Assembly: GCF_021869535.1 (NCBI RefSeq)
Contig: NW_026262581.1
Coordinates: 54,932,001-54,996,000, forward strand
Length of the DNA stretch: 64,000 nucleotides
From: Mytilus californianus
Lineage: Eukaryota
Direction of reading: 5' to 3'
Under the pieces are notes generated by a model. The model was not told where the DNA came from. It worked only from the letters and a program-made list of their open reading frames with translations, and did not search any database. The stretch's first letter is position 1; each line of letters opens with the position of its first letter. Shown here piece after piece: positions 3,001 through 27,600 of the stretch. Made by a program: the position numbers and the translations under genes.

Positions 3001-6000
3001 CTAAGATTGTCCAATGAACCCTGAAAATGAGGTCAAGGTCAGATGAAACATGCCAGTTTGACATGTACTCCTTATAAAACATTCCACACACCAAATATAG
3101 TTGACCTATTGCTTTTAGTATCTGAGATACAGACTTGAAAACATAAAATTAAACTTGATCACTGATCCATGAAATGAGGTCGAGGTCAGATGAACCCTGT
3201 CTAACGGATGTGTAGACCTTATAAGAATCCCTTAAACCAAATATAGTTATTCTATTACCCATAATAAGTGAGTATTTGTCATGACAAACAAACTCAAGAT
3301 ACTTGGCATGAGTAAAGTTTTATCCTGTCCAGTACTATAGAAAAAATTTCACATAACATTTCATTGCATATAAGAAAATAACCATCACTGGAAGTTAACC
3401 AATCAAATTTTCCCCCTTTTTTAACCAGTGTACAAGCTTTAGTAACCATGTAACCTCAAGTTTCCAAAATATTCTATAGAAACCCCAAATAAAGAAATAA
3501 TGGTGCTTTGAAATACCCAAGATATATGTTTATGACTCAGAAATGTTTTACTGCAATGAAATGTAGGATCAATTACCTACAACTGTCAAATTCAAGGGAA
3601 TATTTTTTTTCGACCTATTTTCATATGCAACCGGATGTGACGTACTATGATTTGGTGGTATTACACCTAAAGAAGACTTTTTTGTTGAATAAACTGAATG
3701 TGACTTTTTTCCTTTGTAATACTGGTTATTTCAAGTATTCCTGTCAAGTTTTGTCATAATCAGTTCAATAGTTTGAGAAAAATCTAATATAATGTAAGAC
3801 GACATCTACAGCGATTCGAGCAAAATTTCTTCGAAAAATTCAAACCAAGCCGCATCATGATAGAATATAGTGTGGACCAATAAATGATCAAATATTTATC
3901 TCATCTGCCTACAAACAGTTGAATATGATACAAAAGATGACTTTAGGATGATAAATACTACTAATGGACCTCTTATTCTTCCTTATAAAGTCTCTTTTGG
4001 TCCATTTATACCTCTCATTTCCTCAAAATTTCTACTTTTTAGGCCAATAAATAAAAATTTTGGGGTAACTTTCACTCATTTATGATGGAAATGTTATTAT
4101 AAATGATTAATTGAAGTATTCAAGCTGCTTGAACTATCCATATAAAAGTTTACTGTCTCCAAGGAGGTTTCAATAAGACCTTGCGTAAAACTTAAATTTA
4201 CGCCGCGTTCCAGAGAGGGACATAAAAAACTTCTCTTTTGGTGAATAATTTGTTGTTACTGCTTTAAAAATAATTTCATTTACTTAAAACTATATATTTA
4301 TTAAAGTATTTCTTAGGAAAAATTTTCTAGTATAGCAGAATATAAGAAATAAGGAGAAAAAGCTCCCCAAGACTCTAAGTATGGCTTGTTCTGTCAACTA
4401 ATATTCATGGTAAAGTCCTATTTCAAGGAAATTTTCTCATAAAATGTATTTTGGAGACTCAATCCACTCAGAATATTTCATTATTTGTAATATTTCACTT
4501 AAATAGCAAGAAATTTTAACACATGAGAGTACTCACAAGGTCAAAGGTGCATGTACAGCTTCCCATATTAGGTGTAATACCACCATTGATTTTCCCCTAT
4601 TAGTCTTTGTTAAATTTGCACTTTTCAAAAAATTGTGCAGAATTTATCTTTGTTTCAAATAAAGAAATACTTGGCATGAGTAAAGTTTTATCCTGTCCAG
4701 TACTATAGAAAAAATTTCACATAACATTTCATTGCATATAAGAAAATAACCATCACTGGAAGTTAACCAATCAAATTTTCCCCCTTTTTTAACCTGTGTA
4801 CAAGCTTTAGTAACCATGTAACCTCAAGTTTCCAAAATATTCTATAGAAACCCCAAATAAAGAAATAATGGTGCTTTGAAATACCCAAGATATATGTTTA
4901 TGACTCAGAAATGTTTTACTGCAATGAAATGTAGGATCAATTACCTACAACTGTCAAATTCAAGGGAATATTTTTTTTCGACCTATTTTCGTATGCAACC
5001 GGATGTGACGTACTATGATTTGGTGGTATTACACCTAAACACTGCATGCAGTTTTTGGTTTAAACCTATGAGGATCACTATGAAAATAAGAAGATGTGGA
5101 CAGCTTAATTTCCACCACAGGCCAAATGATGGAGATGTAAGCAACTATAGGTCACCTTTGGCCTTCAAGTTTCAACAATGAGCAAAACCCATACCATATA
5201 TTAGTTAAGCTATAAAACCTTTTATATGACAAAATATAAAACAATTCAAACGAGAAAATCAACGACCTGATTTATGTATAAAACAAGAAACGAAATGAAG
5301 TCCACCATCTCCTGCACTTGAAGACAGAACTCTACCATGTAACACCAAGAAAGTTTCCAGCATCATATTCATTTATAAAGTATCAATCAAAGTGAAGTAT
5401 TGAATGGCTTACCTTCTTAAACTTGTATGGATTTGGACTAGAATATGGCTCAAACTTCACACTAGATTTACTTGTTTTCATATCAATCTGATTTTCTGGT
5501 TTTACAAATGATGACAATTCATTTGCCTCCCTAGAAAAATGTAATTATTCATACAAAGTATTCATAATAAACAAGATTACATGTTAGAATTATTTTGTAT
5601 GATACTTCAGGTCTTCAGTGAGGAAATAACAAATAAATGCCACCTATTTTTCAAAGCCGAAGCAAATACATTACAGATGAAAAATGATCAAATTTATATA
5701 AAATCAAACAATGACATATTGACTTGTATCACTTGGTATCATAATTATACCATAGTTTGTCATACCATTGCTCTGTTCCTGGAATGACTTTTCTAGTTTT
5801 ATTTTGATGTTTTTTTTTGTATGAATACGATTTGAAAAAGCAAATGTGAGGTAAACATCAATCAAAATTGTGTTGTAATGAAATGACATTTAACAAACTT
5901 CTACCATAATACGCTATTTTCTTTAAAAAATAAAAATGGACAAAAATAAGAAAACTGACATAAATTTACCATTCAAGAATACAAAAAATATATTTTCAAA

Positions 6001-9000: not shown

Positions 9001-12000
9001 TAAAAGAACAATAGTAAGAGCTCAACATTCTGAACTTTTTTGCTCACGTCAAAATTTCTCTTTTTATAGCAGTTCTCAAAACAATAAGCAAAACTTGCAT
9101 TTTACCCCATTGTTCCATTTTTAGCCATGTCATCCATCTTGGTTGGCAGTTAGGGTCATCAGACACATTTTTTAAACTAGATACCCACATAATGATTATG
9201 GCCAACAAGTTTCGTTTAATTTGGCCGAGTGGTTTCAGAGGAGAAGATGTTTGTAAAAGTTAACGGACCATGATGACGACAACAACGGGCAACAGACTAA
9301 GGATGACGGACACCAAGTGAGCTAAAAGTGGGTAAAAATCGTCATTTAAGGGTTATCACTCCCATAAGAAGTGGACTGACAATTTCAGCTTTATTGACCT
9401 ATTTGCTGATCATGTCTTGCTGATCACATTTACTGTTTACAGTTTCTCTCTATATTCTAGGTTTTCTACAAACACTAAAAGGTTGAAAACCATCATTTAA
9501 GGGCAATAACTCCGGTAAGGAGTTGACTACAATTTCGTCTATGCTGATTATATTTGCCTTTAAGTTTCTCTCTATCTGTTATAGTTGACTGAAAATTTCT
9601 GCAATTTGACAAATTTGTAGATTTTGTCATGCTTATCATGTTTTGCCAAAAAGTTTCTCTTTTTATCTATTATAGTTTTCAATTATAAATGCAAAAGATT
9701 GGTTAAAATTGTCATTTCAGGACAATAACTCCAATAAGAAGTCGATTAAAGATTTTGTCCATTTGTAGATCTTGTCTTGCTGATCATAATCCTTGCTGTT
9801 TACAGTTTTTCTATATAGTTTTTTTCAAAAATTGGGTGAAAATCATCATTACACTAAATCCTAACTAGTTTACTGGCTATTTCACAGATGTTAAAGAGTT
9901 TGTAGATCTCATCTATTTGATCATTTTTCTGTTTACAGGTTTTCCTTGACCTTATCTATTATATTTTTGACCAAAAATAAAAAAGGGGACAATAACTCCT
10001 GTAAGGAATTGACTGATGATTTTGGCCAACTCTGGTTCCAATTGGCCCAGTTGTTTCAGAGGAGAAAACTTTTGTAAAAGTTAAAATGACTTATAGACGC
10101 CAAATTCACTTCATCCTTTGGGTCAAGTGAGCTTAACAACCAACATTATCATAACTATTCAAGCATGAAAATAAGGTCATGATCAGGTGAACAAATAACC
10201 AGACAGACATATCAACCTTCCAATGATTGTATAGACCAAAGACTGCTGACCTTTTATTCATATTAACTGAAAACTATTATCACGTATCACAAAAACTTTA
10301 TATTGATCAATGAACAATGATAATGTGGTCAAATCAAGTGTCAATCCTGTCAGATTGCATTTGATATGACTGTATTTACAGTGCTAATTATATATGATGA
10401 TGTTTCTTTAATTTTGTAAGTGAGCATGAAAAATTAAGTTTTTAACAGTCCAAATATAGTCTTTCTAAACTAAGGGTTCCATTTAAAGCTGACTATGAAC
10501 TGCTTTCTTTTGCCAACTTTATTTCACTTTGGTTAAATTGTACATACTTTGTCTCGTACTTTGGTTCATTCAAACTGATTTTTGAAACAGATGATGTAGG
10601 TGATACAGTTCCAAGATTAATATCTTCTACCATACGAGAAAATGCAGGCTTGAAAACATCCAAATCGACTTTTTTCACTGGTCTTGATGTTGTATCACAT
10701 CCTACTAAAACAAAATTTTCAACTTTTTTACCTATTTTTATTCTTTATATGTACAAAATTAAATTTGTTCATTGACGAACACAATTTATTATTTTTGTTC
10801 AATAATTTGTAAATATAAAACAGAGCCTTTATCACCTAATACACAAAATATATAGCGAGAGTTGGGTCCTGATGCAGCATGTAACTCTTATGATCAATCA
10901 ATCACTAAAACAGCTTAAAACAGCACAATTTATTATTTCTTATATATTTAAGAAAATTTCTTTTCTTTTTTGTTTTGTTTTAGTTGTCTCTTCTGTGAGT
11001 GTATTGTCCTGAACATGTATGAAATATTTGCCACTGGATGTTAAGCAACCAATAATTAATCAATCTTCTAAGAGTGCATGATTTTTTTTTTATTTGCTCA
11101 AAGCCTGACAAAGGTTGTTTTTTTAATAATTTTTGCTACCCAGATCAACTGGCATTACTTGTTCAGTGTGATGTTGAACATGCAACCATTGCTTCTTGTT
11201 GTCGTACATCTTGAGTGTTTTTGTTTTGTTTTTTCTTTCAATTTTTGAGTTGATGGCAGACTGTGTGGACACTTGGATAATTAAGAACTGAAATTGACAT
11301 AATTCATGGACATTTTGTCTTCTGTTGGAGATAATAATTGTGTAATTGTGTAATGCAGGGCTTCCAAAAAAAATTTGAGCCAGCCGAACATTTTTTTTTT
11401 TGGTCTCATCCCGATTTTAATCCTTTTTAAAGACTTAGTAACAAAAGGAAACCAATAGTAATCAGTTTGGCATCATATAAATTATGATTGACACAAAAAC
11501 GGTATTTGACTTGACTTTTTAATATAAATTTCGATGTTCTGATGTAAACTGTTAAATTGACAGTGCACCATTCGAAGTGTGCAACATCAGCTTACTAATA
11601 TCTGCCGAAGACTCGTTATTTGTGCAAAAATAACGCTGTCATAACTTCAATTACGTTTTTGAAAAGTACACTTACCTCATACCGGATGTTGACTTGACAA
11701 TGGTAAAACACGGACCAGAGACGGATACGTAAAATCCGTGTCCGTTTCAAAGCACGATTGAGTTATTAAAGTAGCTCTTTCCACTTTATTTCTATAGGAA
11801 AAACTCGAAATGAACATTAGATAAAGGTATCAATGATATTTTTAGCATTTTTGAAAAATCGGATGCATAAATAAATCTCGCAACTGCGCCGCGCTTGCGC
11901 ACAAGTGTACTAGTTTAAACAACATTGTTCTGACGATTTTTCACTTAAAACCTTTACAACTACCTTTTTAATTTTTCATCAAATAATATTCATATACGTT

Positions 12001-15000
12001 TTTTGGTAATATGAATCTTGTTAACTCAAATTATTTAGATGCAAACCGCTGAAATTTAAGAAAATAACTTTTATTAGACCGATCAATGTCCGGTACTAAA
12101 TCTACCTGTCGCCTGAACAGGTAAAATAAGCTGTCGGAGAACTAATTTGCCTTGATTGTAATGAGAGGGTATTTAAGTAGGGTGTGTTTTGATAGTAATT
12201 ATTCATCATGTCACTTTTATGACCGGAAATATGTGGCTGTTTAAAATGTTCAGGTAAAAACTGAGAAGATCGCATGAACTTCATTTTTTTTTCTGAACTA
12301 TGTTATTAAAATGTCCGTTTCAGCTTCGACACAACAAGTCATTTATATAATTTATCGGACAAGTCCGGAAAATATGACCGTTTTGGAAGCCCTGTTGTGT
12401 AGCTGCCTCATCCCTTGACCTACTGTATATTCCTCAGTTTTCTTTTTTTTTCATAATCTTATGTACTTTGGTAAACTACCTTTATGATGTGAATGTGCTA
12501 CATTAACTGTCTGAAAGGCTCTTAAATCCTGACCAAGTCCATGTTTTCTTATACCAGTTCCTCCAATGCTTCTGTAAACTTGGACTTTATCTGCAAATTT
12601 CTTTCTTTCAAAAAATTCCTAAAATGTAAAGGTATTAACTTCATATTTTTCAATCTAAGAAACATAATATGAAAAGGAGTAGGGGCAATAAAGCCCTTGT
12701 CCAAATATTAGTACAAATTGAAAAGTTACATTTGTACCATACATATTCTTACATTTCACATCATTTGTTTAAACTACACTAAGGTACAATTTAAGGTGTT
12801 CAGAAAATAAAAACAAATTTCACATACAACAAGTAAACATGGCAACAACTATGACAAAATGTGCATAATTTGTAAATTTTCTTGATTTTCCTTGTTTTAC
12901 GTCAACTTTTAGGTACCGTAGTCGGTCTATATTAGAATGGAAAAGTATGTGCGTACCCAAGAAACAATTCTATATTTGGTAATAATATGTCAATAGTTAT
13001 AATAAAGCTTCTCTTAAATCATTGTGTTGTTTCTTGCCTGTGCAAGATGTCTCCACAAAGGAAATAATGACGAAAAACTGCATCAGCTTAGCAGTTTTCT
13101 TTGTTTTCATGAAATTGGTACATTTTATGAAGTAATTGTGATGTCATCAGTCTTCACAGTAAACTTTTTGGACCACAGTCCCACACCCCATTTTTTTTTG
13201 GTATAAATTCTAAAGGCCTATATTAGACTAGTTTTCACATGCCCACCAGGAAGTTTACAAGCCTCAGGCTTCGGACTACTGCATGCATGGTTTATTGTGC
13301 ATCATAACATCAAAATTTTTATGTAATTCATGTAAATAACATCTGTTACATTGTAGTCTTCAACTTTGAGGCTTTGATTAAGGTTCATCATAAATTTTAT
13401 TCTAGTTTGATTTCAGGACAGAAAGAAAATGACTCAAAATAACTACCAGAAATGTCATAAAATAAAAGGTAGAGTCATTGATTTCCATATTATAAGTTTT
13501 CAGATTTAAATTTGCAAAGGGAAAATAGGGACTGTGATAAGACCTTGAGTTCAGACACAATATAAAGGGCAAACTTCAGAATATAAATATTGATTTATGA
13601 ATAGAAAACATGAACCCGAGAACTTATTTTATAGGACAATATATATCATGTCCAGCCATGCCTTTAAACTTTCTTAGCACAGTTTTGTCTGTACCTAAGG
13701 ACCATTCCCAGTCTGTACTTTAATTGAGTAAATTTTGTAGCCCAAATACCGCCATATTTGCAGACAGCTTATATTAAAAAATGAAATCACTTTATAAATT
13801 TCATGTGTTTGAGTCGCTTTTCTGGATTTTAGCCTTCATCAAGAATGCTCAAAGCCGCATATTTGAAAGCCAAAGATGTATAAGAACAGAAACAATCGAA
13901 CAGCTATATGTACCAAATAGGACCTTTTTAAAAACAATCAAAAAAATATTGTCTTAGGGACTTATCATTTTTTACCTGGGAGGGGGGCTGGTCATTTTGA
14001 AATCATACATACAAAATTTCTTGACCCCCCATAATATTTCACTATTTTTATTTGATCCCCCCCCCCCGTAAAAACATTAAAAAATGTGATCCCCCCTCTA
14101 TTATACATGCCAAAATTTTAACAGGCGAATCACTTACATGTATCATGTTATTTCAAGGAAATATTGAAAATGAAATATTCTCAGTGGATTGAGTCTCAAA
14201 ACTTATTTGAGGGAAAATTGCCTTGAAATAGGGCTCTTCCATGAGGCCTCTTCCATGAATATTAGTAGGTAGAGCAAGCCAGTGCTTTGAGTAGCTTTTT
14301 CTGACTTTTTTTTCTAATTTCCTATATTGGGCTATTAAAGAAAACTTGATTCTGAGTATAACTCTGTAAAAAATATACATGAAAAAGTAAACTTTTTGAA
14401 ACAGTAACAACACATTATTTATATGTCCCTCTCTTGGACGCTGCTTAAACTTGAGTTTTACGTATGGCCTTATTGAAACCTCCATTGAGTCGCTAAACTT
14501 TTATATGGACAGTTCATGCTTTCAGCTTGAACAATTCAGTTACTCATTTATTGTCACATTTCATTCTTAAATGTGTGATAGTAACCTCAAATTTTTGATT
14601 TATTAGCCTAAAAAGTACAAATTTTGAAGGAGTGAGAGGTATAAATGGACCCAAATGGCTCTTGTAATGAAAACAAAAAGATACATTGGCATTAATGCTT
14701 GTTAATTTAGTGATCGACGTGAGTAAAATATAACAACTGAATTATTCAGATTATTAAGCACTTATGCATTTTATATAGGACAAAATGACACAAAATGGCA
14801 GCTTCCTACATCACCAAAGTCTTGTGATGTCTTACTTAATTGTACCGGTATATGAATGGTGTTAAAAATATATTTAGATTTGACTCTTGTAATGTTCTTC
14901 TTGACATTTTGTCTCTTGAAGTATATGTGAACTACTTATTTGCAAGTGCAAAAAATATTGATCCCCCCACTTTGAATTTATTAAAAAAATTGAACCCCCC

Positions 15001-15441
15001 TTGTCCACATACAGAAAAAAACTTGATCCCCCCTGCATTTTGACCAGCCCCCCTCTCAGATAAAAAATGATAAGTCCCTTATTCAAGTTATTGTTGTGAT
15101 TATTTCTGATAGATTATCATTGATAATCCAACAAGGAACTCATGTCAATGGTAATGTAAAAGCCTTTGGCTTACTTTGACCCGAAGACAAAGGTACAAAA
15201 CTATAATAAATATCTGCCTTTAAAATACTACATATGTCCTAGCATAATATATATTGACCTCAGGCTTACAAGTTACAGATAAGTCACACTATGACAGACA
15301 ACGAGGGGCATATAATAGCGATTGGTGGTGGAAATATTCTATTCTATATATTCTTGATATAAAAAAAAAGATAATCACACGCTGTAATTTCCTTTCATTT
15401 TGCGTTCGTATTCGACTTCTAGAGCCTCCCATCCAGTTCAT
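1..15441 (-). CDS. REDIC1: REDIC1/C12orf40-like protein (regulator of class I crossover intermediates), multi-exon, 3' end beyond window start
   Basis: Phase-consistent exons, all GT-AG: 15441-15379 (MNWMGGSRSRIRTQNERKLQR), 12618-12480 (EFFERKKFADKVQVYRSIGGTGIRKHGLGQDLRAFQTVNVAHSHHK), 10704/10701-10548 (tandem NAGNAG acceptor; GCDTTSRPVKKVDLD...SPTSSVSKISLNEPKYETK), 5530-5413, 1716-1633, and 576 to <1 (192 open codons, S/T-P rich, disordered-looking). The N-terminus matches the MNWVGGSRSR...ERRKQKEYFEK start of human C12orf40 as I recall it. Extra exons may be missed. Confidence 0.8.
914..931 (-). CDS. Candidate 18-nt symmetric microexon of REDIC1 (MTRAAF)
   Basis: TGCAG acceptor at 933/932, GTAAGT donor at 913; phase 0/0 between exons 1716-1633 and 576. 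Confidence 0.35.
1805..2242 (+). mobile_element. Non-autonomous Helentron/HINE-like element
   Basis: T-run start, ATGCCCCC...GGGGGCAT hairpin, (CCGT)n microsatellite, internal duplication; related copy at about 45333-45682. Confidence 0.6.
2650..3290 (-). repeat. 'CAAGGTCA/TGACCTTGA' satellite-like array (HINE family remnant)
   Basis: Repeated ATGAGGTCAAGGTCAGATGAA...CCAAATATAG units; same family at 17560-18350, 41465-42695 and 46214-47236. Confidence 0.65.
4571..5035. mobile_element. MITE with 15-bp TIRs and TA flanks; 5'-truncated near-identical copy at 3299-3671
   Basis: GGTGTAATACCACCA (4571-4585) / TGGTGGTATTACACC (5021-5035), TA on both sides; 3299-3671 vs 4667-5039 differ at 2 of 373 nt by my reading. 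Confidence 0.8.
5870..6590 (-). mobile_element. HINE-like element
   Basis: Internal tandem units (AACAAGCTTCTGTCCAAATTTCAT...GTTTGACAAAG) and a terminal GGATCGCTATATGTCTCGC...GCGAC...GCAGGC motif resembling the end at 47190-47236. Boundaries approximate. Confidence 0.5.
6697..7112 (-). pseudogene. Decayed alternative first exon (or optional 72-nt cassette 6768-6697) in REDIC1 intron 3
   Basis: ATG at 7112; one frame of about 138 codons with only two stops (TGA 6971-6969, TAG 6788-6786); ends at a GTAAGT donor in phase 2, matching the phase-2 acceptor of exon 5530-5413. Confidence 0.4.
8056..10137 (-). mobile_element. HINE-like element(s) with 'AAGGGCAATAACTC' satellite units
   Basis: Inverse-orientation relative of 44008-45333 (AAACAAGAGGCTC...GAGCCTG end; GTGAGCTAA ends near 9320 and 10135). 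Boundaries approximate. Confidence 0.6.
11356..12394. mobile_element. hAT-like MITE with 14-bp TIRs in REDIC1 intron 2
   Basis: CAGGGCTTCCAAAA (11356-11369) / TTTTGGAAGCCCTG (12381-12394); no intact 8-bp TSD; probably carries a second repeat ending ...GTGTACTAGT near 11912. Confidence 0.7.
13957..15078. mobile_element. PIF/Harbinger-like MITE in REDIC1 intron 1
   Basis: TIRs GGGACTTATCATTTTTTA...GGGGGCTGGTCA at both ends; 3-bp direct TTA flanks (13954-13956, 15079-15081). Confidence 0.8.
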
Positions 15442-15620
15442 TTTCAACACCGGCAAAGCAGACGATTGAAGCTCTTCTTCGTTGAAAACCAAGAACAGTA
15501 CAAAGTTCAAAGTCTCGTATCACATGTGATCTGTCATGGAGGGCAAGAGGAGCAAATTTTCAGATTTTGGTTAAATTTTTACGTATTAATGATAAATCAT
15601 CTGTTAACATTCAAAGAACA
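15442..15620. promoter_or_regulatory. Compact bidirectional promoter/5' UTR region between REDIC1 and ABCD
   Basis: 179 bp between divergent ATGs (15441 minus, 15621 plus). Contains the perfect palindrome ATCACATGTGAT (15519-15530, E-box core) and the DR1-like AGTACA-A-AGTTCA (15497-15509). Confidence 0.6.
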
Positions 15621-18600
15621 ATGTCTAAAATGGCAAGATCGATTTTTTCTTCCAAAAGCATGCAGGAAAAGGTTGCTAAAGGAGCTCTATTAGCTATTAT
15701 TCTTGCAATTGGTGCTAAAAAATTGTCTCCAAAATTGAGAAAATTATTATTTGGCTCGAAGAAACGGTCGATTTCAAAAAGCAAAGATTCTTTAGACGAT
15801 GGAAATGGTTCTGTTAATGATAAGAAAGGAAAAGGAAGTTTGAACAAGGAATTTTACAGACAACTTCGTTATCTTCTGAAAATATTGTTCCCAGGGATAT
15901 GGAGCAAAGCTTTTGGCATCCTTACACTTCATACTGGAACTCTAGTCGCAAGAACATTTCTGTCAATTTATGTTTCAATGTTAGATGGAAAAATTGTCAG
16001 AACTATTGTTAGACGTGATCTTAGGGCATTTTTACTTCAACTATCTCAATGGCTTCTTATATCCATTCCTGCAACATTTATTAACAGTTTAATCAGATAC
16101 CTAGAGTGTGAACTTGCTTTAGTTCTCAGAACAAGATTAGTGAATCATGCTTATAATCTGTATTTTGACAATCAAACATATTACAGAGTTAGCAACTTGG
16201 ACAGTAGACTTGCAAATGTTGACCAGTGTCTAACAGATGATATAACCATGTTCACTCAGTCTTTAGCACACTTATATTCACATTTAACCAAACCAATGCT
16301 TGATGTTACATTAATGTCTTTCACATTATACACACTTGCAAACAAAAGAGGAGCAAGTTCGAAATATCCCTCAATAATAGGATCAGTGGTTTTATACGTG
16401 ACAGCTCAAATTCTAAAAGCAATATCACCAAAGTTTGGTAAACTTGTTGCAGAGGAGGCTAGACTCAAAGGAGACCTCAGATTTGTGCATTCAAGAGTAA
16501 TTGCCAATGCTGAGGAAATTGCATTCTATGGTGGCCACAAGGTAAATGTACAGTTATCGTCATAATGTTTAAATATTAACATGATTAACTTGATTAGGTC
16601 GTCTTTGAATATTAAGTATGAACAGGGTTGCAGGCCAGTTCAAAATCTTGTCTGGCTAGTACATGTACAAGATTCCTTATTATTTATTCCTAAAACCACT
16701 GTAGGTAAATAGTAACATAGTAAGTTTCTTAGAAGCATGCTACATAAAGTACATTTATAAGATTTTGAATACTTTAGAAACTTATTAAAAAGTGAAATTT
16801 CAAACCCATATATTTAGGGTAACATGTTTATTAATCATATAGATAGCAAGATTAAAAAGTAAAGTTTATTTTTGTCACACAATTAATTTATTTCTTTATG
16901 TTATTGTCTACTGTCAATGACTGTTGTGATTATTTCAGATAGAGTTGAATCTTCTACAGAAATGCTATAAAAAATTAGCAGAACAAATGCATTTGATATT
17001 TAACAAACGATTGTGGTATATCATGTTTGAACAATTCTTAATGAAATATGTTTGGAGTGCCAGTGGTTTGATTATGGTAGCGATACCTATTCTTACAGCA
17101 AAAGGTGGTGGAATTAGAGCTGATGGTAAGTCTAAGATATCAAGCTTAAGATTTAGGGCACACCTCAATGAAACAGCAACCCAAAAACAATAACTTCATG
17201 GGAAAAAAACCAGCTACATTTACATGTACATGTCAACATACACTGTACAGTCCACTAGTTTTCTATTATATAAAGCTCTAAATCATATGATTACACTGTA
17301 GACAAAGAGACATATATAGTGAACAAATACAGTATAACAAATTTAAAATACACACATATATCTGGCATCAACATAGATAAATTTTAAGGAAAAACATGGA
17401 GATATATATACAAAGATAAAAACTGTCTTGGGACTGGCACACAAAAGTGTACTGTACATGTAGGTTAAACCAGTTTTTACCATCACCAGTGACATTCCTT
17501 AGCAGAAAAGTATGTGGGGGTGATGGCAACATTAAGGATTTGTATAAAGCTTTATATTTCAGGAAGCTGAAGGCCTGGATGCTTCATACATGAATCTCGT
17601 AAACATATGCTTTATGTTTCTGCCTGGCATATATCTGTTGTCATTTAACCTCAAATTTCATGGTTTAGGGATTGCTAAATTTGTATAGGTCTATATCTGA
17701 CACATGATTTTTACACCTATTATGAGTAATAGGCTATCTATAAGAATCATTGGAAGGTCTACATATCCGTCAAACATGGTCCACCTTTCCTTGACCTCAT
17801 TTCATGGACCAGTGATCATCAACATTAAGTTTTTTGTAAATTATTTCTATTTCTCAGATACTATAAGCAATAAGTCAACTATAATTTTGGTGTTAAGAAT
17901 GATTACATATAAAGGTGTACATGTTTGTCTGGCAGGGTTCATCTGACCTTGACCTAATTTTCATGGTTAGGTCTGTTTCTCAGATACTACATATATAAGC
18001 AATAAGTCAACTACAATGTATATGTATGGAATAATTGTAAGGTGTACATGTCTACATTTGTATATTAAGGTTCATCTGACCTTGACCTCATTTTATTGTT
18101 CATTGGTCAATGTTAGGTTTTTGTGGTTGTGCTGGTTTCTTGGTTACTAAAAGTAATACAACAACTATATTTTGTGTATGGAATGATTGCAAAGTGTTCA
18201 TTTGGCTTTGACCTCATGTTCATGGTTCATAGGTCAAAGTTAAGTTTTCGTAGTAAGGTCCCTTTCTCTGATACCATACATTGTAACATAAAGTTCAACT
18301 ATATTTGGCATATGGAATGATTGGAAGGTGAACATGTTGGTCTTGTTAGGTACAAATGTATGGTAATTCTGTAAAGAAGAGTTAAAGTAAACTCAAATAA
18401 TTTTTCTGTAAAAATTATTATTTATAAAAAACGAAAACACAAATAAAAGTTAATAACAGTGAAATTGTAAATGATACCATATTATAGAATGCTCACAGTT
18501 ATTGAAAGCAAAATCAGATGTACATGATGTATGCATTTATGTTTTTGTGTACTGGCTGTTTAAGTACATTCATATAAGTCACTTTTAATAATACATAAAA

Positions 18601-21600
18601 TTGAGAATGGAAATGGGGAATGTGTCAAAGAGACAACAACCCGACCATAGAGCAGACAACAGCCGAAGGCCACCAATGGGTCTTCAATGCAGCGAGAAAC
18701 TCCCGCACCCGGAGGCGTCCTTCAGCTGGCCCCTAAACAAATATGTATACTAGTTCAGTGATAATTGACGTCATTCTAAACTCCAAATTATACACAAGAA
18801 ACTAAAATTAAAAATGATACAAGACTAACAAAGGCCAGAGGCTCCTGACTTGGGACAGGCGCAAAAATGCGGCGGGGTTAAACATGTTTTTTGAGATCTC
18901 AACCCTCCCCCTATACCTCTAGCCAATGTAGAAAAAACAAACGTACAACAGTACGCACAGTAAAACTCAGTTTAAGAGAAGTCCGAGTCCGTTGTCAGAA
19001 TAGGAAAAAAAAGAAAATAAACAAAATGACAATAATACATAAATAACAACAGACTACTAGCAGTTACTGACATGCCAGCTCCAGACCTCAATTAAACTGA
19101 TTGAAAGATTATGTCTTCATCATATGAATATCAGGCACAATCCCTCCTGTTAGGGGTTTAGTATTATACCGTCATAAAATATATGAGAAGAACATATCTG
19201 TTTTCATAGGATCAGAGGTGGATGATGACCCAGATGGAGGTGTAAGCGAAAGAACAAAAGCCTTCACTACAGCTAGGAACTTACTGATTAATTGTGCCGA
19301 TGCTATTGAAAGAATGATGTCTTCTTATAAAGAGGTAAAACAAAGATATGTGAAAGAAAAGTTTTGGACATTTATTTAAACTTAATTAAATTGGGAGGGA
19401 ATATAAGGAACAACAAATGGGAAATCATGGACAGGCTCTGTATTCATTTGGAAAAAAAACGTTTAATTAAGAGTATAATGTTATTACATCCATTTTATAT
19501 ATCACCATAGATACCTTGTGAAACCTGTCGAAACGGAACTTCTTAAGGGCTAAAAAATTTGTTTAGTTTATACAGGTGTTTGGTTTGTACAGGTTCAAAA
19601 TACATCGATAATTCATCAAAAGGGCAACAGGAATCACAAAAATACTGGACAGTACATGTACAACATACATTTATATTCCACCAACTCCTTACTCCTAGAA
19701 AAAGACATTCAAACAACAATCAACAACACATGGTTTAGATGTTTGTATAAAGGGAATTTGGAATTAGTCTGGTTTAGGCAGATTTGGGTTAAGTTCTAGG
19801 TTCAGTGATGACAGGTTCTAATGTAAACTACACTGTATGACTTCAAAGTTAAACTGATCTTTGTATTTTTAAGGACAATGCATTATACATTTATTTATTC
19901 GAGAAAAAAAATTACCCACCTATAATGATAAATAATGTTTTATCCTTCCATAGCCATAGGAGAGTTCCGGGATAGTTGTTATTTCAATGTTGAGGTTGAA
20001 AAGTTCTACCAAATGACATTTTTCTTTGCATCTGGCTAGTTTTTAACACAGAGGAATTGGCAGATGGAAAGATTTAATAGATTTCCACTTCAAAAAATTT
20101 ACTCCACATTTCTATTTTTACCCCTTCACCCTGTCAGATGAAAACCTACCATAAGATGACATAATCAATAAATAATTGATATTTTCATTCAGAAGAGGTT
20201 GTATTGATCCTTAAAAGTCTTTTTCCATAGTAACTTACACATTTTAAGGAACAAACATGGGCAGAAATATGATTTCTTTATATTAGGAGTGACTAGAATA
20301 GTTGTATGGTTGGAAAATTTTATGTACACGTATGATCAAAGTTTATAATATTTTTTACCTTTCAAATATTAGTTGTGTGTATTATCTATGTTTAATATGA
20401 ATTATTTACATTATAGATAACTGAACTAGCTGGATACACATCTAGAGTTTCAGAAATGTTCGAAACTTTCAATGATATCAGACAGGGAAAGTACAAGAGG
20501 ACAATTGTGACAAAGCAAAAAAAGGGAAAGTCAAACTTAAAGAAAATTTCTGGACCATTAGAAATAAAAGGTATTTGATTACATAAATGATTCTGCACCT
20601 TTTGTCAGCAAGTGACCATAAGAGGGCTATAGTTTAGGACCCATAGTCTTAAAACAAAAGTTCTCTCTAGCAAGAGGAAAAAGCAGGAACTCAACTCATT
20701 GATGCTGTATAATATGTATAATTTTTTTGTTCAGATATAGTATCCCTTTTTTTTTTTTTAGCAATTACAGAAATAAACTAGGGATGGCAGTGCTCTCTCA
20801 GTTTCCATAAAATAAAAATGTCTTTTTCCATTATTGAAACACTGGTTTAATTCACTCGTAATCTAGTGCAACGAAAATAGTTGTGTTTATTGATTCAAGC
20901 TTTCATTCTGGTTTATGGTGACAGAATATGGCTTGATGAAAGAACTGTATTGCATATTTATATAATTTTTTTCAGCCTCACCACTTTGATTATGGGAACA
21001 TAACGGTAGATAAAATGGAAATAATATTTTGATTTTAAAATTTAAAGCTAATTTTTTTTTAAAGAACAATAACTGTTAGAGAAATCATGTTTTTTTCATT
21101 AATTATTATTTTATAATGAAGATGACAAGAAAAAATAATATTATCAAAATTCTATGTATTAATTTTATTTTCAGCATATACTTTTCCCAGTACGTGCATA
21201 AGTGTATCCTTTAACAATTAATTTTTTATTATAACATAATAAAACTGTTAATATGCATCTTCACTAGCCAAGGGTTATGATCCAGTCCCCCTCCTCTTAA
21301 CCCTACAAGTTCCGGCTTAATCTGCCAAGGGTGAAGAGGCTACCAAAGATGATTAATATGATGCTGTTCACAGAACTGTGAATGAAAGATCTTAGGATCC
21401 CTTCACAGTTAATATAGTTTTGAATAGCTAATAATAAATTAAATGAATGATTTCAGGGAAGGTAATTGACACAGAGTCTGTTATAGACACAGAAGATTTA
21501 GCCATCATTACACCTAATGGAGATGTTATTGTAGCCAGTCTGACTATGAGGGTAAGTTAGAGGAAAGGACAATTTATTGGAGTAGAAGAAATGAGGAAAA

Positions 21601-24600
21601 AGTCAGCAGTGATTACTTATTTCATAAAAGATGCCGTCAACTGACAATTTTTGGCAGTTTCTGTAACAATTTGAATGAAGTTTATCAATGGATGAATATT
21701 GTGTGGAAATCTTTGCCATAACTACAGAAAAGGAGTTGTTCAAGTTAAACTTATAGTTATCTGCTTTTATTAACTTACAAAAAGTATATACAGTGTTTCT
21801 TTGATAAGGACAATAAATAACCATGAACAATTCAGGCGTTAAAATTTTGATATAAATCAATTTAGTACTCTATACAAGAAATGATATATATAGAAGGAAT
21901 CAATTTTAACATTTAAGATTTTAAAAACTTTTATCTAACTTGCTGTTTATTGAAATAGTGACCTGGGGCTCATGCTACCAGGCAACTGGGGGAAAGAAGT
22001 CACTTTCCTGTCTATCATATAAAAATATGAAGAAGTGGTATGGTTGCCAATGAGACAACATGATTTTTAATATGGTTTAAATTTACTGATAACAAAATCA
22101 ATATTTATACCAATAAAAACAATATTAAAAGATCTAATTACAGTGTTGAATTGGTAACCTTTCAGAATAAGTTTATTTAAAGGATTTATCTGATAAGTTT
22201 ACCCAGATCATATCATTTCTATGTTTAGTAAACATCACCTAAAATTAAGGATGTGCTACTCTGTTTGAAATAAGTTTTCTACAGGAACAGCCAAACTTGC
22301 AAACCAAATCATTGTATCTATGGAAGAATTTAGTAAAGGTTTTAAGGAATTTGTGGTAACGAAATCCCTGACTTAATAATTTACCAGTAATACATAGATT
22401 ACTCTCATTGAAATCCAAAACGTCACTACAGATACTGCTATCAGTAAGGTGTCCCATTTAGAACATTTTAAGTATCTAAATTTACTCACTATATGGTGGC
22501 TGAAATGAATCCAGCCTTTAACTTTTGAAGCAAGCTAAGGTTTTTTCTTAAGTTTCCTTGTTCAAAAACATTTCTTTTTGCTTGGTATTTGAATTTGAAA
22601 CCAAAATGTAAATATCATATTCATTCTTTAAATAAAAAAAAATAGGTCTAACCAAGATATATTACATTATAATTGGTTGAACAGGGGGATAATTCTGGAT
22701 TTTTATTAAAATCTTTCTTATTTCAGGTTGAACCAGGCATGCATCTTCTTATAACTGGACCAAATGGTTGTGGAAAATCCTCATTGTTCAGAATTTTTAG
22801 TGGATTGTGGCCTGTGTACAAAGGAAAACTTCAGAAACCTCCACCAACTTCAATGTTTTATATCCCTCAAAGGTATCAATTTATTTTGTAAATTAAATAG
22901 TATTTTATGATCTTCTTTATAGGGATTTATTTTTGTCAGGGGTTTTAGTTTTTTGTGGATAATATATATACATGATATAAAACAGCAAATTATCAAAACT
23001 AAGAGTTTAATAAAAATTCTAGAATGAAGATAGATTTCAAATTAGAATCTCCACAGAGATTTCGTTATGTAAACAAACACAGCTTGTGTGTATTGTCCAA
23101 TGTCAAGGTTCTTTGAGCAAATATCATTTCCATTTTGCTTTTCACACAAGTTCAATGGATACATACCTCTACAACCTGGCATTTGACAATTCTGGAATGT
23201 TTACAATATTACCTTGGCTAGTTTGGAATAAGAATAGCAGATCTACCATTCTGGAGTGTCTTACATTAAATTGATCTTTTTTCCAAGGTATCATTATATT
23301 TTTACCATTTCAGAATGGTAACCGTACATACCATTGAAAATGATACTTTACAAATTTGGTGTGTCGAAAGCGCTTTCATCAATAACACTTGAATCCCAAA
23401 ATTTAAAAGCCTTGGATACATGAACACTTGACAAGCTATTCCACAAAAAGGGATCAAAAAATCATAGCCAACACCGTCAGGTCAACTTTGCCTGTGGGAT
23501 TTTGAACCTTAGATTTCTTCATTTATTAACAGAAAATTTTGGAAATCAAATGGTGAGGCACTAACTACTAGGCTGATTATGTATCGAACCACTATTAGAA
23601 AATGAAAACTTGTTAAAAATTTTTTGCATCGGAAGCGCTTATCTGGATTTATCGGGTCAAGTAGTAAATAGGGGATTGTTGTTCCATCAGAAGAATTGAG
23701 GGGTAAATCAGTTTATATGTACATAAGTTGACAGGTTGACAGTTTTAATTTTTATGTACATAGGTCGACAGATCAACAGTTTGAAAGGTCGACATAAATA
23801 AATGGGCATTATTGGTAAACTCTCGACTGTCAAACACTATTTCATCATTTCTTTTTAAAGTTTTTGTCAACTGTCGACCTGTCTACTTGTCAACTGTCAA
23901 CCTGTTGACCTGTCAACTGTCTACTTGTTTTAAGATTGTTACCACTTAAGCATTATTCTGGTGTAATGAAATAATTTGATTTTGTTGACTTCATTTACGT
24001 CAACTGTCGACCTGTCAACTTACAAGAATACACAAGTGTACGAATTTATTATAAAAGCTGGAACTGTATTACCATTTATCCTACATGAGCCGATTCATCT
24101 TCATCAGGAATGTTCCAATCCTAATATTTGAAAGCCAGGAATGTATACATAATTGACAAGTTATACAAAAACGAGGGTCCTAAGTCTTAAAATAATAGCA
24201 AAAGTCATCTAAGGTCAACTAAAAGCTGCCTTTTGATACATTCATCTACTGTCTATTAATATATTCATATAAATTGTCTATTTGAAAATCAAAATACAGA
24301 TGCCATGCTATTGACATTATGTAATTTAATTTAAAATATTTTTTTATAGACCCTATATGTCTATAGGAACATTGAGAGACCAAGTGATATATCCAGATAA
24401 TGTAGAGGATATGAAGAAGAAAGGCATGATTGAAAAAGACTTAATGAATATACTGAATATAGTCAACTTGCAACACATAGTTGACAGGGAAGGAGGTATA
24501 TTGTTTAAAATTTTTAAATTAAAATGTTTTTTTACTTGGTTTGTCCTGTCATTTTGTATGTGGGGCATGCATAAAATTGAGAATGGAAACAGGGAATGTG

Positions 24601-27600
24601 TCATAGAGACAACAATCCGACCAAAGAGCAGAAGATAGCCCAAGGCCACCAATGGATCTTCAACACAGTGAGAAAATTCCACAACCTTAGGCGGGCTTCA
24701 GCTGGCCCCTAAAAATGTTTTCCTGATGTTTATGGTAATTTAACGTCTAGTCTCATCATATTGATGCCTATATATCTATACATGTAGTCTTTTGAAACAT
24801 CTATTGCAAATATCAAAGTTAAGACAATACCCATGTCCATATATAAAAAATTAGAAGATGTGGTATGATTGCCAATGAGACGACAACTCTCCACCAGGTT
24901 GCACTCTGATAAACTATTTATTCCTTCAATCATTTATATAGCTGGCAGTAAAAGTAGTTTTCTGTATATACACAAACTTTTTGTTTTTGAATTTTTTTAA
25001 TATTTTCACAAATGTTATTGAGAAACCTGCATTGACTATCATTTAATGAAAAATACCTAGATTTGATAAGGAATCAATTACAAGTTTAAAGAGATTTGGG
25101 AAAAAATCACTGAAATTTATCAATGATCCCATTAAATGTACAAATTTATTATCAATCTCCAAATTTATACTGGAACTGTAATAACATGAGACATGGGAGA
25201 TGGTAAAGCATAGCACTTGTGTTTATGCAATTTTATATTATGCATTAGATTACCACAAGTAGTGAAGTAAAAAGTAAAGTGTGAGTTTTAATTATTAGGA
25301 TGTTCATTTTCCACTCTTAAAGAAAAGCGACATATATACAACTTAAGTCTCCAAGTTACAATTTGTAATGTAACTTATAAGCATATTATATATGCTGTAT
25401 TTGCAATGATTGATTAATTGATTGATTGATTGTTGGTGTTAAACACCACTTTCAGAACTCTTGGCTTTATCTTGGCAGCAAGTTATTATTGATTGATGAA
25501 GCCATAGTGTCCGACCTTCAAAGTTATTATTGATTGATGAATCCAGAGTCTCTGACCTTCAGTAAGAAAACTGGCAAACCTATTCAATTAGAATTGGAGT
25601 TCAATGTGCAGGGTTCAAACTCACAACCTCAGTGTTGACTGGCTAGTAATACTGTAAATAAACTACTTAGACCAAGGCCCTTATTTGCAAAGAAGATGTT
25701 TGTATGATTTTAATTTCTAAGTCAATATAAAAATAAGGAGATGAGGTATGATTGCCAATGAGACAACTATCCCCCAAAGTCCAAATAAAGTGGATGTAAG
25801 CAATCATAGGCAACCGTACGGTCTTCAACAATGAGAAAAACCCATACTGTATAGTCAATGTCTGTTATAAACCATGTATCTTCTTCTGTAGGTTGGGATT
25901 CAGAAAGTGATTGGAAAGATGTGTTATCTGGAGGAGAGAAACAGAGAATGGGCATGGCTAGGATATTTTATCACAGGTTCGTGACTTATTATATAAGAAT
26001 CTAAAACAGGTGACAGTTCAAGACAAGAAAATGAAGAACAAGATTTCATGTGGTAAAATTTTAACAAAAACAAGGTTTGTTGCTAATTGTCTAGTCTTGC
26101 ACTTTCATTTGTATATCATTATTTTTACTTCCACTGATATCATCAAAATTCACCAAAAACGACATTTGAGAGTTAACAATTTTGACAGAGTGCATTTCAA
26201 AATTTTATCATTATTGAAAAATGCTAGCTTTTAAATGTTAACTATACTTCAAATGGAAAAATCTAAAAATCACCCACTTTTGAAGGTGAGGTGTAACTTT
26301 AGAAGAACTTATTTAACTTTTCTCACAATGGGTAAAACAACATTAAAGACAACAACACCCGTACATTACCTCAAAGTAATGGTTTGTTATGGTCTACATG
26401 TTTCGCTAACAAGGGTGGTGTCTTCAGGACAAGTAATAGTATGAAATGAAACACTGAAGTACAAAACATGCAGTTATGACAGTCATGACAACGTTATTGT
26501 TAAATTGAAAGTGAAAGTAAAGTATAAATAAAGTTATTGATAGAAGAGTTAGTGTTTTCTTGTAGCTGTAAACGATGTGGTTAGTGTCTATTCTGACTGT
26601 GTTGCAATATTCTCCTGCAAGGTTCCTAAGGGTTACGTTATATAGAAAGTGAAAGTGAAAGTAAATGTTAAATTGTCAGTTTCATTTCGCAAATGAACAG
26701 TACTTCACTGATCATTCCGTACCATTTCATTTGGCTTCATTCTCAAGGAGGTACTTCTTCCAATTGTGTTGGGACTATTGTTAGATGTATGGTCATCAAA
26801 GTTGTGGAAATCGTTGTAGATCAGTTACAATTTGAGGATTTGCATAATATCCATGTTTCCAGTTTATTTTCACAACTATGTTGTGTGGTTCCTGTGGTTC
26901 ATTCTGTTTCTGGTTCTCTCTACTTTTTTCTTAACAAGTTCCCCCAAATCTCCATATATTCATAGTCATATTTGTTGTATGGTATTGTTGGGCTGCTGTC
27001 TCATTGATCCCCCTCTTTTCAATTTATTCAGTCATATTTGTTGTAGGGTGTTGTTAGGCTGCTGTCTCATTGATTTTCCTCCTTAAATCTCCATTCATTT
27101 ATAGTCATATTTGTTGCAGGGTTTTGTTGGGCTGCTGTCTCATTGATTTTCCCTTCAAATCTCCATTTATCATAGTCATATTTATGCAGGGTTTTGATGG
27201 GCTGCTGTCTCATTGATTTTCCTCTAAATATCCATTTACTCATAGTCATATATTTCTTGTAGGGTTATTTTTGGCTGCTGTCTCATTGATTCCCCCCAAT
27301 TCCCCATTTATTCATAGTCATATTTGTTGGAGGGTGTTGTTGGCCTTTTGTCTTATTGATTTTCTCCCAAATGTCATTTTTTTTTCAGTCATATTTGTTG
27401 CAGGGTTATGTTAGGCTGCTGTTTCATTCATTTTCCCCCTTATTTCCCTTTATTCATAGCCATATTTTTACATGGTTTTGTTGGTCTGCTGACTCATTGA
27501 TTTTCCTACCTTTATATCAATTTTTCATAGTCATATTTGTTGCATGGTTTTTTTGGCTGCTGTCTCATTGATTTTCCCTTCAAATTCCATTTTCCTTAGT

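What the first reader, a model, noticed from the sequence alone, without database searches (positions are those of the whole stretch)
15379..16541. REDIC1-ABCD head-to-head pair with 179 bp between start codons: apparent mollusc-to-human microsynteny
Seen: a minus-strand ATG at 15441 begins MNWMGGSRSRIRTQNERKLQR|EFFERKK, and the ABCD ATG is at 15621. Known (from memory): human C12orf40/REDIC1 begins MNWVGGSRSR...ERRKQKEYFEK and lies next to, and divergent from, ABCD2 at 12q12. Inference: this divergent pair predates the protostome-deuterostome split and here shares one tiny bidirectional promoter, although one gene is a meiotic crossover factor and the other a peroxisomal lipid transporter. 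It would also mark ABCD2, not ABCD1, as the vertebrate paralog at the ancestral locus.
Basis: partly seen in the sequence, partly recalled or inferred. Interest (0 to 1): 0.8.

Follow-up and report, generated by a model that had tools for sequence, protein, structure and literature searches.

The report
Ancient REDIC1–ABCD head-to-head gene pair
In this mussel genome the meiotic crossover gene REDIC1/HEIP1 and a peroxisomal fatty-acid transporter gene (ABCD1/2 type) start 179 bp apart on opposite strands, and the same back-to-back pairing is found in a snail, a brachiopod, amphioxus, a sea urchin, fishes and a bird, so it is a gene neighbourhood kept for more than 500 million years.

Summary
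A minus-strand ATG at 15441 opens a 63-nt exon that splices to 12618-12480. The resulting 67-aa N-terminal domain is homologous to vertebrate REDIC1/C12orf40/HEIP1: phmmer gives E about 3e-4 to proteins named REDIC1 in a bird and amphibians, among 1.84 billion proteins, and hhalign of invertebrate against vertebrate profiles gives 99.7%, E 1.5e-26. An intron position and phase are also shared. The plus-strand ATG at 15621 opens exon 1 of an ABCD1/2-type half-transporter, and 179 bp lie between the start codons.

With fetched loci I found the same divergent ABCD|REDIC1 adjacency in Gigantopelta, Lingula, Branchiostoma, Diadema, two teleosts and a sparrow. It is absent within 10 kb in Nematostella, a crinoid and a spider. 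The fish neighbour is ABCD2 by names and by tree; the invertebrate genes branch before the ABCD1/ABCD2 split. A sugar-transporter gene, which stands where SLC2A13 does in fishes, usually lies downstream as well.

That the two genes share one promoter is plausible but not shown. ABCD mRNA reaches 15555, and no RNA was seen on the REDIC1-like exons. This is a new member of a known kind, the conserved ancestral 5'-5' microsyntenic pairs.

The parts
15379..15441 (-). REDIC1/HEIP1-like coding exon 1 (21 codons, MNWMGGSRSRIRTQNERKLQR), phase 0 donor gtgatt
   Evidence: 100% match to P0056 aa 1-21
12480..12618 (-). REDIC1-like exon 2 (139 nt, EFFERKK...HSHHK); completes the conserved ~67-aa N-terminal domain
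   Evidence: intron position and phase shared with all homologues checked
10548..10704 (-). REDIC1-like exon 3
5413..5530 (-). REDIC1-like exon 4
1633..1716 (-). REDIC1-like exon 5
1..576 (-). REDIC1-like exon 6. It runs off the window start. The gene ends about 1.4 kb beyond, at G000:C1:54930617.
15442..15620 (.). 179-bp interval between the two start codons. It holds both 5'UTRs and the presumed shared or interleaved promoter. GC is 0.36, against 0.31 for the window.
   Evidence: ABCD mRNA contigs reach 15555
15519..15530 (.). 12-bp perfect palindrome ATCACATGTGAT (two overlapping E-box-like CANNTG), near the middle of the interval; candidate shared element only
   Evidence: sequence; CACGTG in the Gigantopelta and Lingula intervals but not in amphioxus, icefish or sparrow
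15621..16541 (+). ABCD1/2-type peroxisomal ABC half-transporter, coding exon 1 (307 codons, transmembrane domain)
   Evidence: PF06472, E 2.4e-80; human ABCD1 319 bits, ABCD3 133, ABCD4 64; a spliced contig stops fitting at 16541
16936..37230 (+). Remaining ABCD exons, approximate: 16936-17130, 19221-19343, 20417-20572, 21450-21554, 22691-22876 (Walker A), 24348-24497, 25891-25977, 35435-35569, 36994-37230
   Evidence: tblastn with ABCD2 fragments; PF00005 on 22673-22891

Best explanation
The stretch is the 5'-5' junction of two single-copy genes of a Mytilus mussel. On the minus strand lies the orthologue of the meiotic pro-crossover factor REDIC1/C12orf40/HEIP1. On the plus strand lies the pro-orthologue of vertebrate ABCD1 and ABCD2, the peroxisomal very-long-chain acyl-CoA importers. 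The divergent adjacency is inherited from at least the last common ancestor of protostomes and deuterostomes. In vertebrates the ABCD2 duplicate kept it.

Shown here: the identity of both genes, their orientation and spacing, and the same arrangement in seven other animal lineages.

Inferred, about 55% likely: the pair persists because the two core promoters and 5'UTRs are packed into one very short nucleosome-free region. At most about 113 bp separate the REDIC1 ATG from the furthest ABCD mRNA 5' end seen. Almost any breakpoint would therefore damage one or both genes. The constraint would be structural entanglement rather than a need for co-expression. The two genes appear to be expressed independently, since ABCD RNA is present and REDIC1-like RNA absent in the same runs.
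For: REDIC1 identity:
- phmmer with the window's 67 aa hits proteins named 'regulator of DNA class I crossover intermediates 1' in a bird, a frog and the axolotl, 'C12orf40' in fish, and '-like' in Gigantopelta, Mytilus trossulus and Amphiura.
- Profile-profile comparison gives 99.7%, E 1.5e-26.
- All exons lie at one locus in the genome.
- The phase-0 intron after codon 21 is shared from cnidarian to bird.
- The predicted helical N-terminus followed by a low-complexity rest agrees with the description of HEIP1 in PMC10265981.

ABCD identity.

Linkage: an ABCD gene lies on the opposite strand immediately upstream of the REDIC1 homologue in the following species.
- Branchiostoma belcheri, 1329 bp
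- Gigantopelta aegis, 311 bp
- Diadema setosum, 3028 bp
- Lingula anatina, 381 bp
- Chaenocephalus aceratus, 799 bp
- Collichthys lucidus, 1325 bp
- Ammospiza maritima, 9695 bp

The fish neighbour is ABCD2: all the best named hits carry that name and the tree places it in the ABCD2 clade at 100/99.

A Sugar_tr/MFS gene lies downstream in amphioxus, Gigantopelta, both fishes and the crinoid, and about 29 kb away in Mytilus.

ABCD mRNA contigs start at 15555 and 15565, and a spliced contig ends its fit at 16541.

Conserved 5'-5' pairs with short spacers are a described class attributed to cis-regulatory constraint (PMC3514665).
Against: - No RNA was seen on the REDIC1-like exons in one RNA-seq run (about 6% of it read) and three contig sets. 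A second run search was inconclusive. Its transcription start, and therefore the sharing of a promoter, is unproven.
- Spacing is 3 kb in the urchin and 9.7 kb in the sparrow, so tight packing is not needed to keep the pair in those lineages.
- The adjacency is absent within 10 kb in Nematostella, the crinoid Anneissia and the spider Caerostris, so it can be lost.
- The downstream Sugar_tr linkage cannot be explained by a bidirectional promoter. It suggests that slow rearrangement or a larger regulatory block contributes.
- No motif is common to all the intergenic intervals.
Confidence: 0.8

Rival explanations
1. Neutral retention. The pair survives only because the spacer is a tiny target for rearrangement breakpoints and because most of the genomes sampled (mussel, snail, brachiopod, amphioxus, urchin, vertebrates) rearrange slowly. 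No regulatory element is shared and selection does not act on the linkage itself.
For: The spacers are very short in lophotrochozoans and fishes. The nearby Sugar_tr gene, and in Lingula an LRR-Roc-COR gene, are also retained, which points to general block conservation. The pair is lost in three lineages. The two genes are not co-expressed in the runs laid.
Against: The orientation is kept in all eight lineages that have the pair. The pair also persists where the spacer has grown to 3-10 kb. Surveys find 5'-5' pairs and conserved orientation enriched beyond neutral controls (PMC3514665).
Confidence: 0.3
2. Functional co-regulation. REDIC1 and ABCD1/2 are driven together in germ cells by a shared element, for example the central E-box-like palindrome, because meiotic cells need peroxisomal very-long-chain fatty-acid import.
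For: There is a 12-bp palindrome at 15519-15530, and CACGTG occurs in the Gigantopelta and Lingula spacers. Co-expression is one documented reason for conserved 5'-5' pairs.
Against: ABCD RNA occurs without REDIC1-like RNA in the same runs. The motif is missing in the amphioxus, icefish and sparrow spacers. A 12-bp palindrome in 179 bp has a chance probability of roughly 0.04, so it is weak evidence. There is no known functional link between the two proteins.
Confidence: 0.12
3. The resemblance to REDIC1 is a chance or low-complexity match, or the adjacency arose independently in different lineages (convergence).
For: Only about 67 aa are conserved, Pfam has no model that matches, and single-sequence E-values to vertebrates are modest at about 3e-4.
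Against: hhalign gives E 1.5e-26. The matches are anchored at residue 1 of the hits. Eleven columns are invariant across 18 invertebrates. The intron position and phase are shared. The same two flanking gene families recur. The odds that a given gene family is the upstream divergent neighbour by chance are about 1 in several thousand per lineage.
Confidence: 0.02

Closest known systems
Conserved ancestral microsyntenic pairs (CAMPs) of unrelated genes in 5'-5' orientation, e.g. HSPE1-HSPD1 (Irimia et al. 2012, PMC3514665)
   Same: Two unrelated genes lie head-to-head, the orientation is conserved, the spacer is short in many lineages, and the pair is retained across protostomes and deuterostomes.
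   Different: I did not find this pair named in any searchable text, and the CAMP supplement is not held. Unlike HSPE1-HSPD1, the two genes are functionally unrelated and are not co-expressed in the runs examined. I did not find the pair in the one cnidarian checked.
HEIP1 / REDIC1 / C12orf40 pro-crossover factor family (PMC10265981; PMC10447524)
   Same: The conserved domain sits at the very N-terminus and is about 70 aa long, beginning MNW.GG.R.R...Q.EFFE. [quoted passage not shown] The gene is single-copy.
   Different: The mussel protein is annotated as 510 aa, and M. edulis isoforms reach 801 aa. Function, localisation and expression are untested in any mollusc. Lophotrochozoan genes lack the intron after codon 8 that cnidarian and deuterostome genes have.
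Vertebrate ABCD2 (ALDRP) locus, human 12q12: KIF21A-ABCD2-C12orf40-SLC2A13-LRRK2
   Same: The arrangement ABCD(-) | REDIC1(+) ... Sugar_tr(-) is seen in two teleosts. ABCD(-) | REDIC1(+) is seen in a bird. Human gene lists place the same genes together at 12q12.
   Different: The mussel ABCD gene predates the ABCD1/ABCD2 duplication. Its spacer is 179 bp, against 0.8-1.3 kb in fishes and 9.7 kb in the sparrow. The human orientation and spacing come from memory and were not tested here.

Membership tests
HEIP1/REDIC1/C12orf40 | Conserved ~70-aa domain at the extreme N-terminus (MNW.GG.R.R ... Q.E[FY]FE ... DL) | tested here: met
   hits aligned from residue 1; invariant M1 N2 W3 G5 G6 R8 R10 Q20 F24 E25 D52; hhalign 99.7%, E 1.5e-26 against vertebrate REDIC1
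HEIP1/REDIC1/C12orf40 | N-terminal patch predicted structured; rest of the protein unconserved and apparently disordered | tested here: inconclusive
   AF2 of residues 1-80 gives helices 3-38 and 51-64, mean pLDDT 73. The rest has no Pfam match and is 13% Ser and 11% Lys. No disorder predictor was run.
HEIP1/REDIC1/C12orf40 | Typically one gene per genome | tested here: met
   all seven exon matches in the 1.65-Gb assembly lie at this one locus
HEIP1/REDIC1/C12orf40 | Shared gene structure with recognised members | tested here: met
   the phase-0 intron after codon 21 is present in Nematostella, amphioxus, urchin, crinoid, fishes, bird, Gigantopelta, Lingula and the window
HEIP1/REDIC1/C12orf40 | Meiotic expression and a role in class I crossover formation | not testable with these tools
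   no RNA on its exons in the runs laid; function is known only for mouse, human, rice and Arabidopsis
ABCD1/2 subfamily of peroxisomal ABC half-transporters | N-terminal ABC_membrane_2 domain followed by one ABC_tran ATPase domain | tested here: met
ABCD1/2 subfamily of peroxisomal ABC half-transporters | Closer to ABCD1/2 than to ABCD3 or ABCD4; branches outside the vertebrate ABCD1/ABCD2 split | tested here: met
   319 bits against 133 and 64; vertebrate clade 100/99, ABCD2 clade 100/99 including the fish neighbours
ABCD1/2 subfamily of peroxisomal ABC half-transporters | Peroxisomal location and acyl-CoA transport | not testable with these tools
   inferred from homology only
Conserved ancestral microsyntenic pair / bidirectional gene pair | Adjacency of unrelated genes in several deeply diverged lineages with conserved 5'-5' orientation | tested here: met
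Conserved ancestral microsyntenic pair / bidirectional gene pair | Spacer under 1 kb (signature of a bidirectional promoter) | tested here: met
   179 bp here, 311 in Gigantopelta, 381 in Lingula, 799 in the icefish. Not met in amphioxus, croaker, urchin and sparrow (1.3-9.7 kb).
Conserved ancestral microsyntenic pair / bidirectional gene pair | Both transcription starts inside the spacer; correlated expression | tested here: inconclusive
   The ABCD 5' end reaches 15555. No REDIC1-like reads were found. Only about 6% of the one raw RNA run was read, and its tissue is unknown.

The most novel reading that the evidence does not exclude
ABCD-REDIC1-SLC2A13-like, perhaps together with an LRRK-like gene, is an urbilaterian regulatory block. 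Within it a germline-specific meiotic promoter and a metabolic transporter promoter share one element of about 100 bp, such as the central E-box-like palindrome. ABCD1/2 would then have an unrecognised, co-regulated role in meiotic cells.
Probability: 0.08. Interest if true: 0.7.

Novelty: new member of a known kind. Interest (0 to 1): 0.45.

Why it matters
REDIC1/HEIP1 evolves so fast that only about 70 residues can be recognised, and most invertebrate copies are annotated as 'uncharacterized'. The conserved neighbours and the shared intron give independent, positional proof of orthology from molluscs to vertebrates. The pair adds a clean case to the catalogue of ancient 5'-5' gene pairs, and one that joins a germline-restricted gene to a metabolic gene. 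With 179 bp between the start codons, it offers a compact natural system for asking how two differently regulated promoters coexist. It also identifies ABCD2, not ABCD1, as the vertebrate duplicate that kept the ancestral neighbourhood, which is useful for reconstructing the history of the adrenoleukodystrophy gene family.

Tried and rejected
- Pfam finds no family for the 67-aa N-terminus or for full-length homologues.
- The word-index protein search with the 67 aa found nothing, because its length filter excludes full-length relatives.
- RNA evidence for the REDIC1-like gene: read laying showed zero depth on exons 1 and 2. A run search with exon 6 gave a uniform share of about 0.2 across many organisms, which may be a repeat or a conserved piece.
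- The bacterial-type promoter scan is irrelevant to a eukaryote.
- A common E-box in all spacers is rejected: it is absent in amphioxus, icefish and sparrow.
- The look-ups for the fish protein named redic1 (P0068) and for Acropora P0073 were not on record.
- The supplements of the HEIP1 paper and the CAMP paper are not held, so I could not check whether the pair is already in a published list.
- No human contig was fetched or compared. The human arrangement rests on literature gene lists and on my memory.
Full report
**1. What is in the sequence**

On the minus strand an ATG at 15441-15439 opens the reading MNWMGGSRSRIRTQNERKLQR. A GT follows at 15378. A second exon lies at 12618-12480. It is preceded by ttttag and followed by gtagtt, and it begins EFFERKK.

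On the plus strand the first in-frame ATG after a stop is at 15621. It opens a 307-codon exon that ends at a donor at 16541. Bases 15442-15620 give exactly 179 bp between the start codons.

**2. The minus-strand gene**

Pfam has no model for the 67-aa peptide, and the word-index search is blind to longer relatives. An exhaustive phmmer search of 1.84 billion representatives found 32 proteins at E<1e-3. Thirty of them align from their own residue 1.

The names of these hits fall into three groups:
- Mytilus edulis, M. galloprovincialis and M. trossulus, the last named 'regulator of DNA class I crossover intermediates 1-like'.
- Other invertebrates: Gigantopelta ('C12orf40-like'), scallop, oyster, Solemya, Patella, Octopus, Lingula, two amphioxus species, sea urchins, a crinoid, a brittle star ('REDIC1-like'), Nematostella, Acropora and a spider.
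- Vertebrate proteins named REDIC1 (sparrow, Mantella frog, axolotl) or C12orf40 (Cottoperca).

P0056 carries no source name. It matches the window's exons at 100% identity and is evidently this genome's own 510-aa product. A six-exon model with canonical GT-AG introns reproduces its residues 1-379: 15441-15379, 12618-12480, 10704-10548, 5530-5413, 1716-1633 and 576-1. The last two exons lie just beyond the window start, and the whole 1.65-Gb assembly has only this one locus.

An alignment of 18 invertebrate N-termini compared with 16 vertebrate ones gives hhalign probability 99.7%, E 1.5e-26 over 65 columns.

An independent character agrees. The phase-0 intron after codon 21 is present in every gene examined, from Nematostella to the sparrow. 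A second intron after codon 8, which creates a 39-nt microexon, is present in the cnidarian and in all deuterostomes. It is missing in Mytilus, Gigantopelta and Lingula.

AlphaFold2 predicts two helices (residues 3-38 and 51-64) for the domain. The remaining 440 residues are rich in Ser and Lys and have no family match.

This fits the published picture. C12orf40, REDIC1 and HEIP1 are one family, conserved from plants to humans only in the first ~70 residues, and required for class I crossovers (PMC10265981, PMC10447524).

**3. The plus-strand gene**

Exon 1 matches PF06472 at E 2.4e-80. It is much closer to human ABCD1 (319 bits) than to ABCD3 (133) or ABCD4 (64). Further exons up to about 37230 include the Walker A exon.

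RNA contigs from mussel runs cover exon 1. One 1604-nt contig stops fitting exactly at 16541, as a spliced mRNA should. Two contigs start at 15555 and 15565, so the 5'UTR is at least 66 nt long.

**4. The linkage in other animals**

For each REDIC1 homologue I fetched the gene with 10-kb flanks, oriented so that REDIC1 is on the plus strand and starts at 10001. The gene ranges are CDS ranges: each end carries the ATG.

An ABCD gene (PF06472 plus PF00005) lies immediately upstream on the opposite strand in seven species:

| Species | ATG-to-ATG distance |
|---|---|
| Gigantopelta aegis (snail) | 311 bp |
| Lingula anatina (brachiopod) | 381 bp |
| Chaenocephalus aceratus (icefish) | 799 bp |
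| Collichthys lucidus (croaker) | 1325 bp |
| Branchiostoma belcheri (amphioxus) | 1329 bp |
| Diadema setosum (sea urchin) | 3028 bp |
| Ammospiza maritima (sparrow; gene named REDIC1) | 9695 bp |

tblastn with the window's ABCD exon 1 shows 51-59% identity to these neighbours.

No ABCD lies within 10 kb in three other species:
- Nematostella: the upstream 771-aa gene has no ABCD similarity.
- The crinoid Anneissia: an RNA polymerase I A34 gene lies upstream.
- The spider Caerostris: the copy is intronless and no neighbour is called.

A Sugar_tr/MFS gene lies downstream of REDIC1 in amphioxus, Gigantopelta, both fishes and the crinoid. In the mussel's own genome a homologue of it lies at about G000:C1:54894002-54901681, convergent with REDIC1 and roughly 29 kb away. 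In the fishes this is the position that SLC2A13 holds in the human 12q12 gene lists.

**5. Which vertebrate paralogue**

The icefish neighbour's exon 1 retrieves, as its best named hits, only 'ABCD2' proteins of fishes, birds, reptiles and mammals. 'ABCD1-like' proteins appear far lower.

In a maximum-likelihood tree the two fish neighbours sit inside the ABCD2 clade (100/99). The five invertebrate neighbours, the window's included, fall outside the vertebrate ABCD1+ABCD2 clade (100/99). ABCD2 is thus the duplicate that kept the neighbours. If the duplication was part of the vertebrate genome duplications, which is my inference and not tested, both loci descend from the ancestral one and the ABCD1 locus lost its REDIC1 copy.

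**6. How it most likely works**

Shown: two unrelated genes lie head-to-head, with the orientation conserved in eight lineages of Lophotrochozoa and Deuterostomia. The spacer is 179-800 bp in four of them.

Inferred: in the mussel, no more than about 113 bp (15442-15554) remain between the REDIC1 ATG and the furthest ABCD mRNA end seen. The two core promoters must therefore overlap or abut, unless REDIC1 has a distant non-coding first exon. Such entanglement makes nearly every breakpoint harmful. It is the explanation given for the known class of conserved 5'-5' pairs (PMC3514665).

Co-expression seems not to be the reason. The runs that hold ABCD mRNA show nothing on the REDIC1-like exons. 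The sampling was thin, however, and the tissue is unknown.

Neutral retention through a small target in slowly rearranging genomes remains a serious rival. The wider retention of the sugar-transporter gene and the three losses fit it.

**7. Comparison and novelty**

The kind is known: about 600 conserved ancestral microsyntenic pairs, mostly 5'-5'. I found no text that mentions this pair or any synteny of HEIP1/REDIC1. The supplementary lists that might hold it are not available to me. Because REDIC1 orthology is hard to detect by ordinary clustering, the pair may well have been missed by earlier surveys. I rate it a new member of a known kind, of moderate interest.

No human contig was fetched. 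The human orientation and spacing rest on my memory.

Noticed in passing
window 15379-15441, compared with L001, L002, L004, L006, L007, L019, L020 at 10001-10024: The intron after codon 8 of REDIC1, which creates a 39-nt microexon for residues 9-21, is present in Nematostella, amphioxus, urchin, crinoid, fishes and bird. It is absent in Mytilus, Gigantopelta and Lingula, which suggests a lophotrochozoan intron loss.
   Followed up: yes
G000:C1:54894002-54901681 (L015 2002-9681; one more hit at L016 1595-1765): A sugar-transporter (MFS) gene is homologous to the one that flanks REDIC1 in fishes, Gigantopelta, amphioxus and the crinoid. It is convergent with the mussel REDIC1-like gene and about 29 kb away. 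This suggests a three-gene block like human ABCD2-C12orf40-SLC2A13.
   Followed up: partly
L005 1398-4448 (Lingula): An LRR-Roc-COR (LRRK-like) gene lies next to the Lingula ABCD gene. In the human gene lists LRRK2 lies in the same 12q12 neighbourhood, so the ancestral block may be larger.
   Followed up: no
window 30931-32880 (-): An intact 649-codon ORF with Mab-21 nucleotidyltransferase and Mab-21_C domains (cGAS-like) lies antisense in the large ABCD intron between 25977 and 35435.
   Followed up: partly
window 15519-15530: A 12-bp perfect palindrome ATCACATGTGAT lies near the middle of the 179-bp spacer, 24 nt upstream of the furthest ABCD cDNA end. CACGTG occurs in the Gigantopelta and Lingula spacers but not in amphioxus, icefish or sparrow.
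   Followed up: partly
window 49712-49981 (-): An exon-like ORF with a RhoGEF-type PH domain (PF15405, PF22697) indicates another gene downstream of ABCD, convergent with it.
   Followed up: no
window 10850-11250 and 13850-14050; also 3508-3759 and 4876-5181: Very high RNA and contig depth with many loose ends marks dispersed repeats inside REDIC1-like introns. Two near-identical ORFs about 1.4 kb apart (both begin MKYPRYMFMTQKCF) show a duplicated element.
   Followed up: no
L018 10001-12970 (Caerostris darwini): The spider REDIC1 homologue is intronless and has no called neighbours within 10 kb. It may be a retrocopy that replaced the ancestral locus.
   Followed up: no
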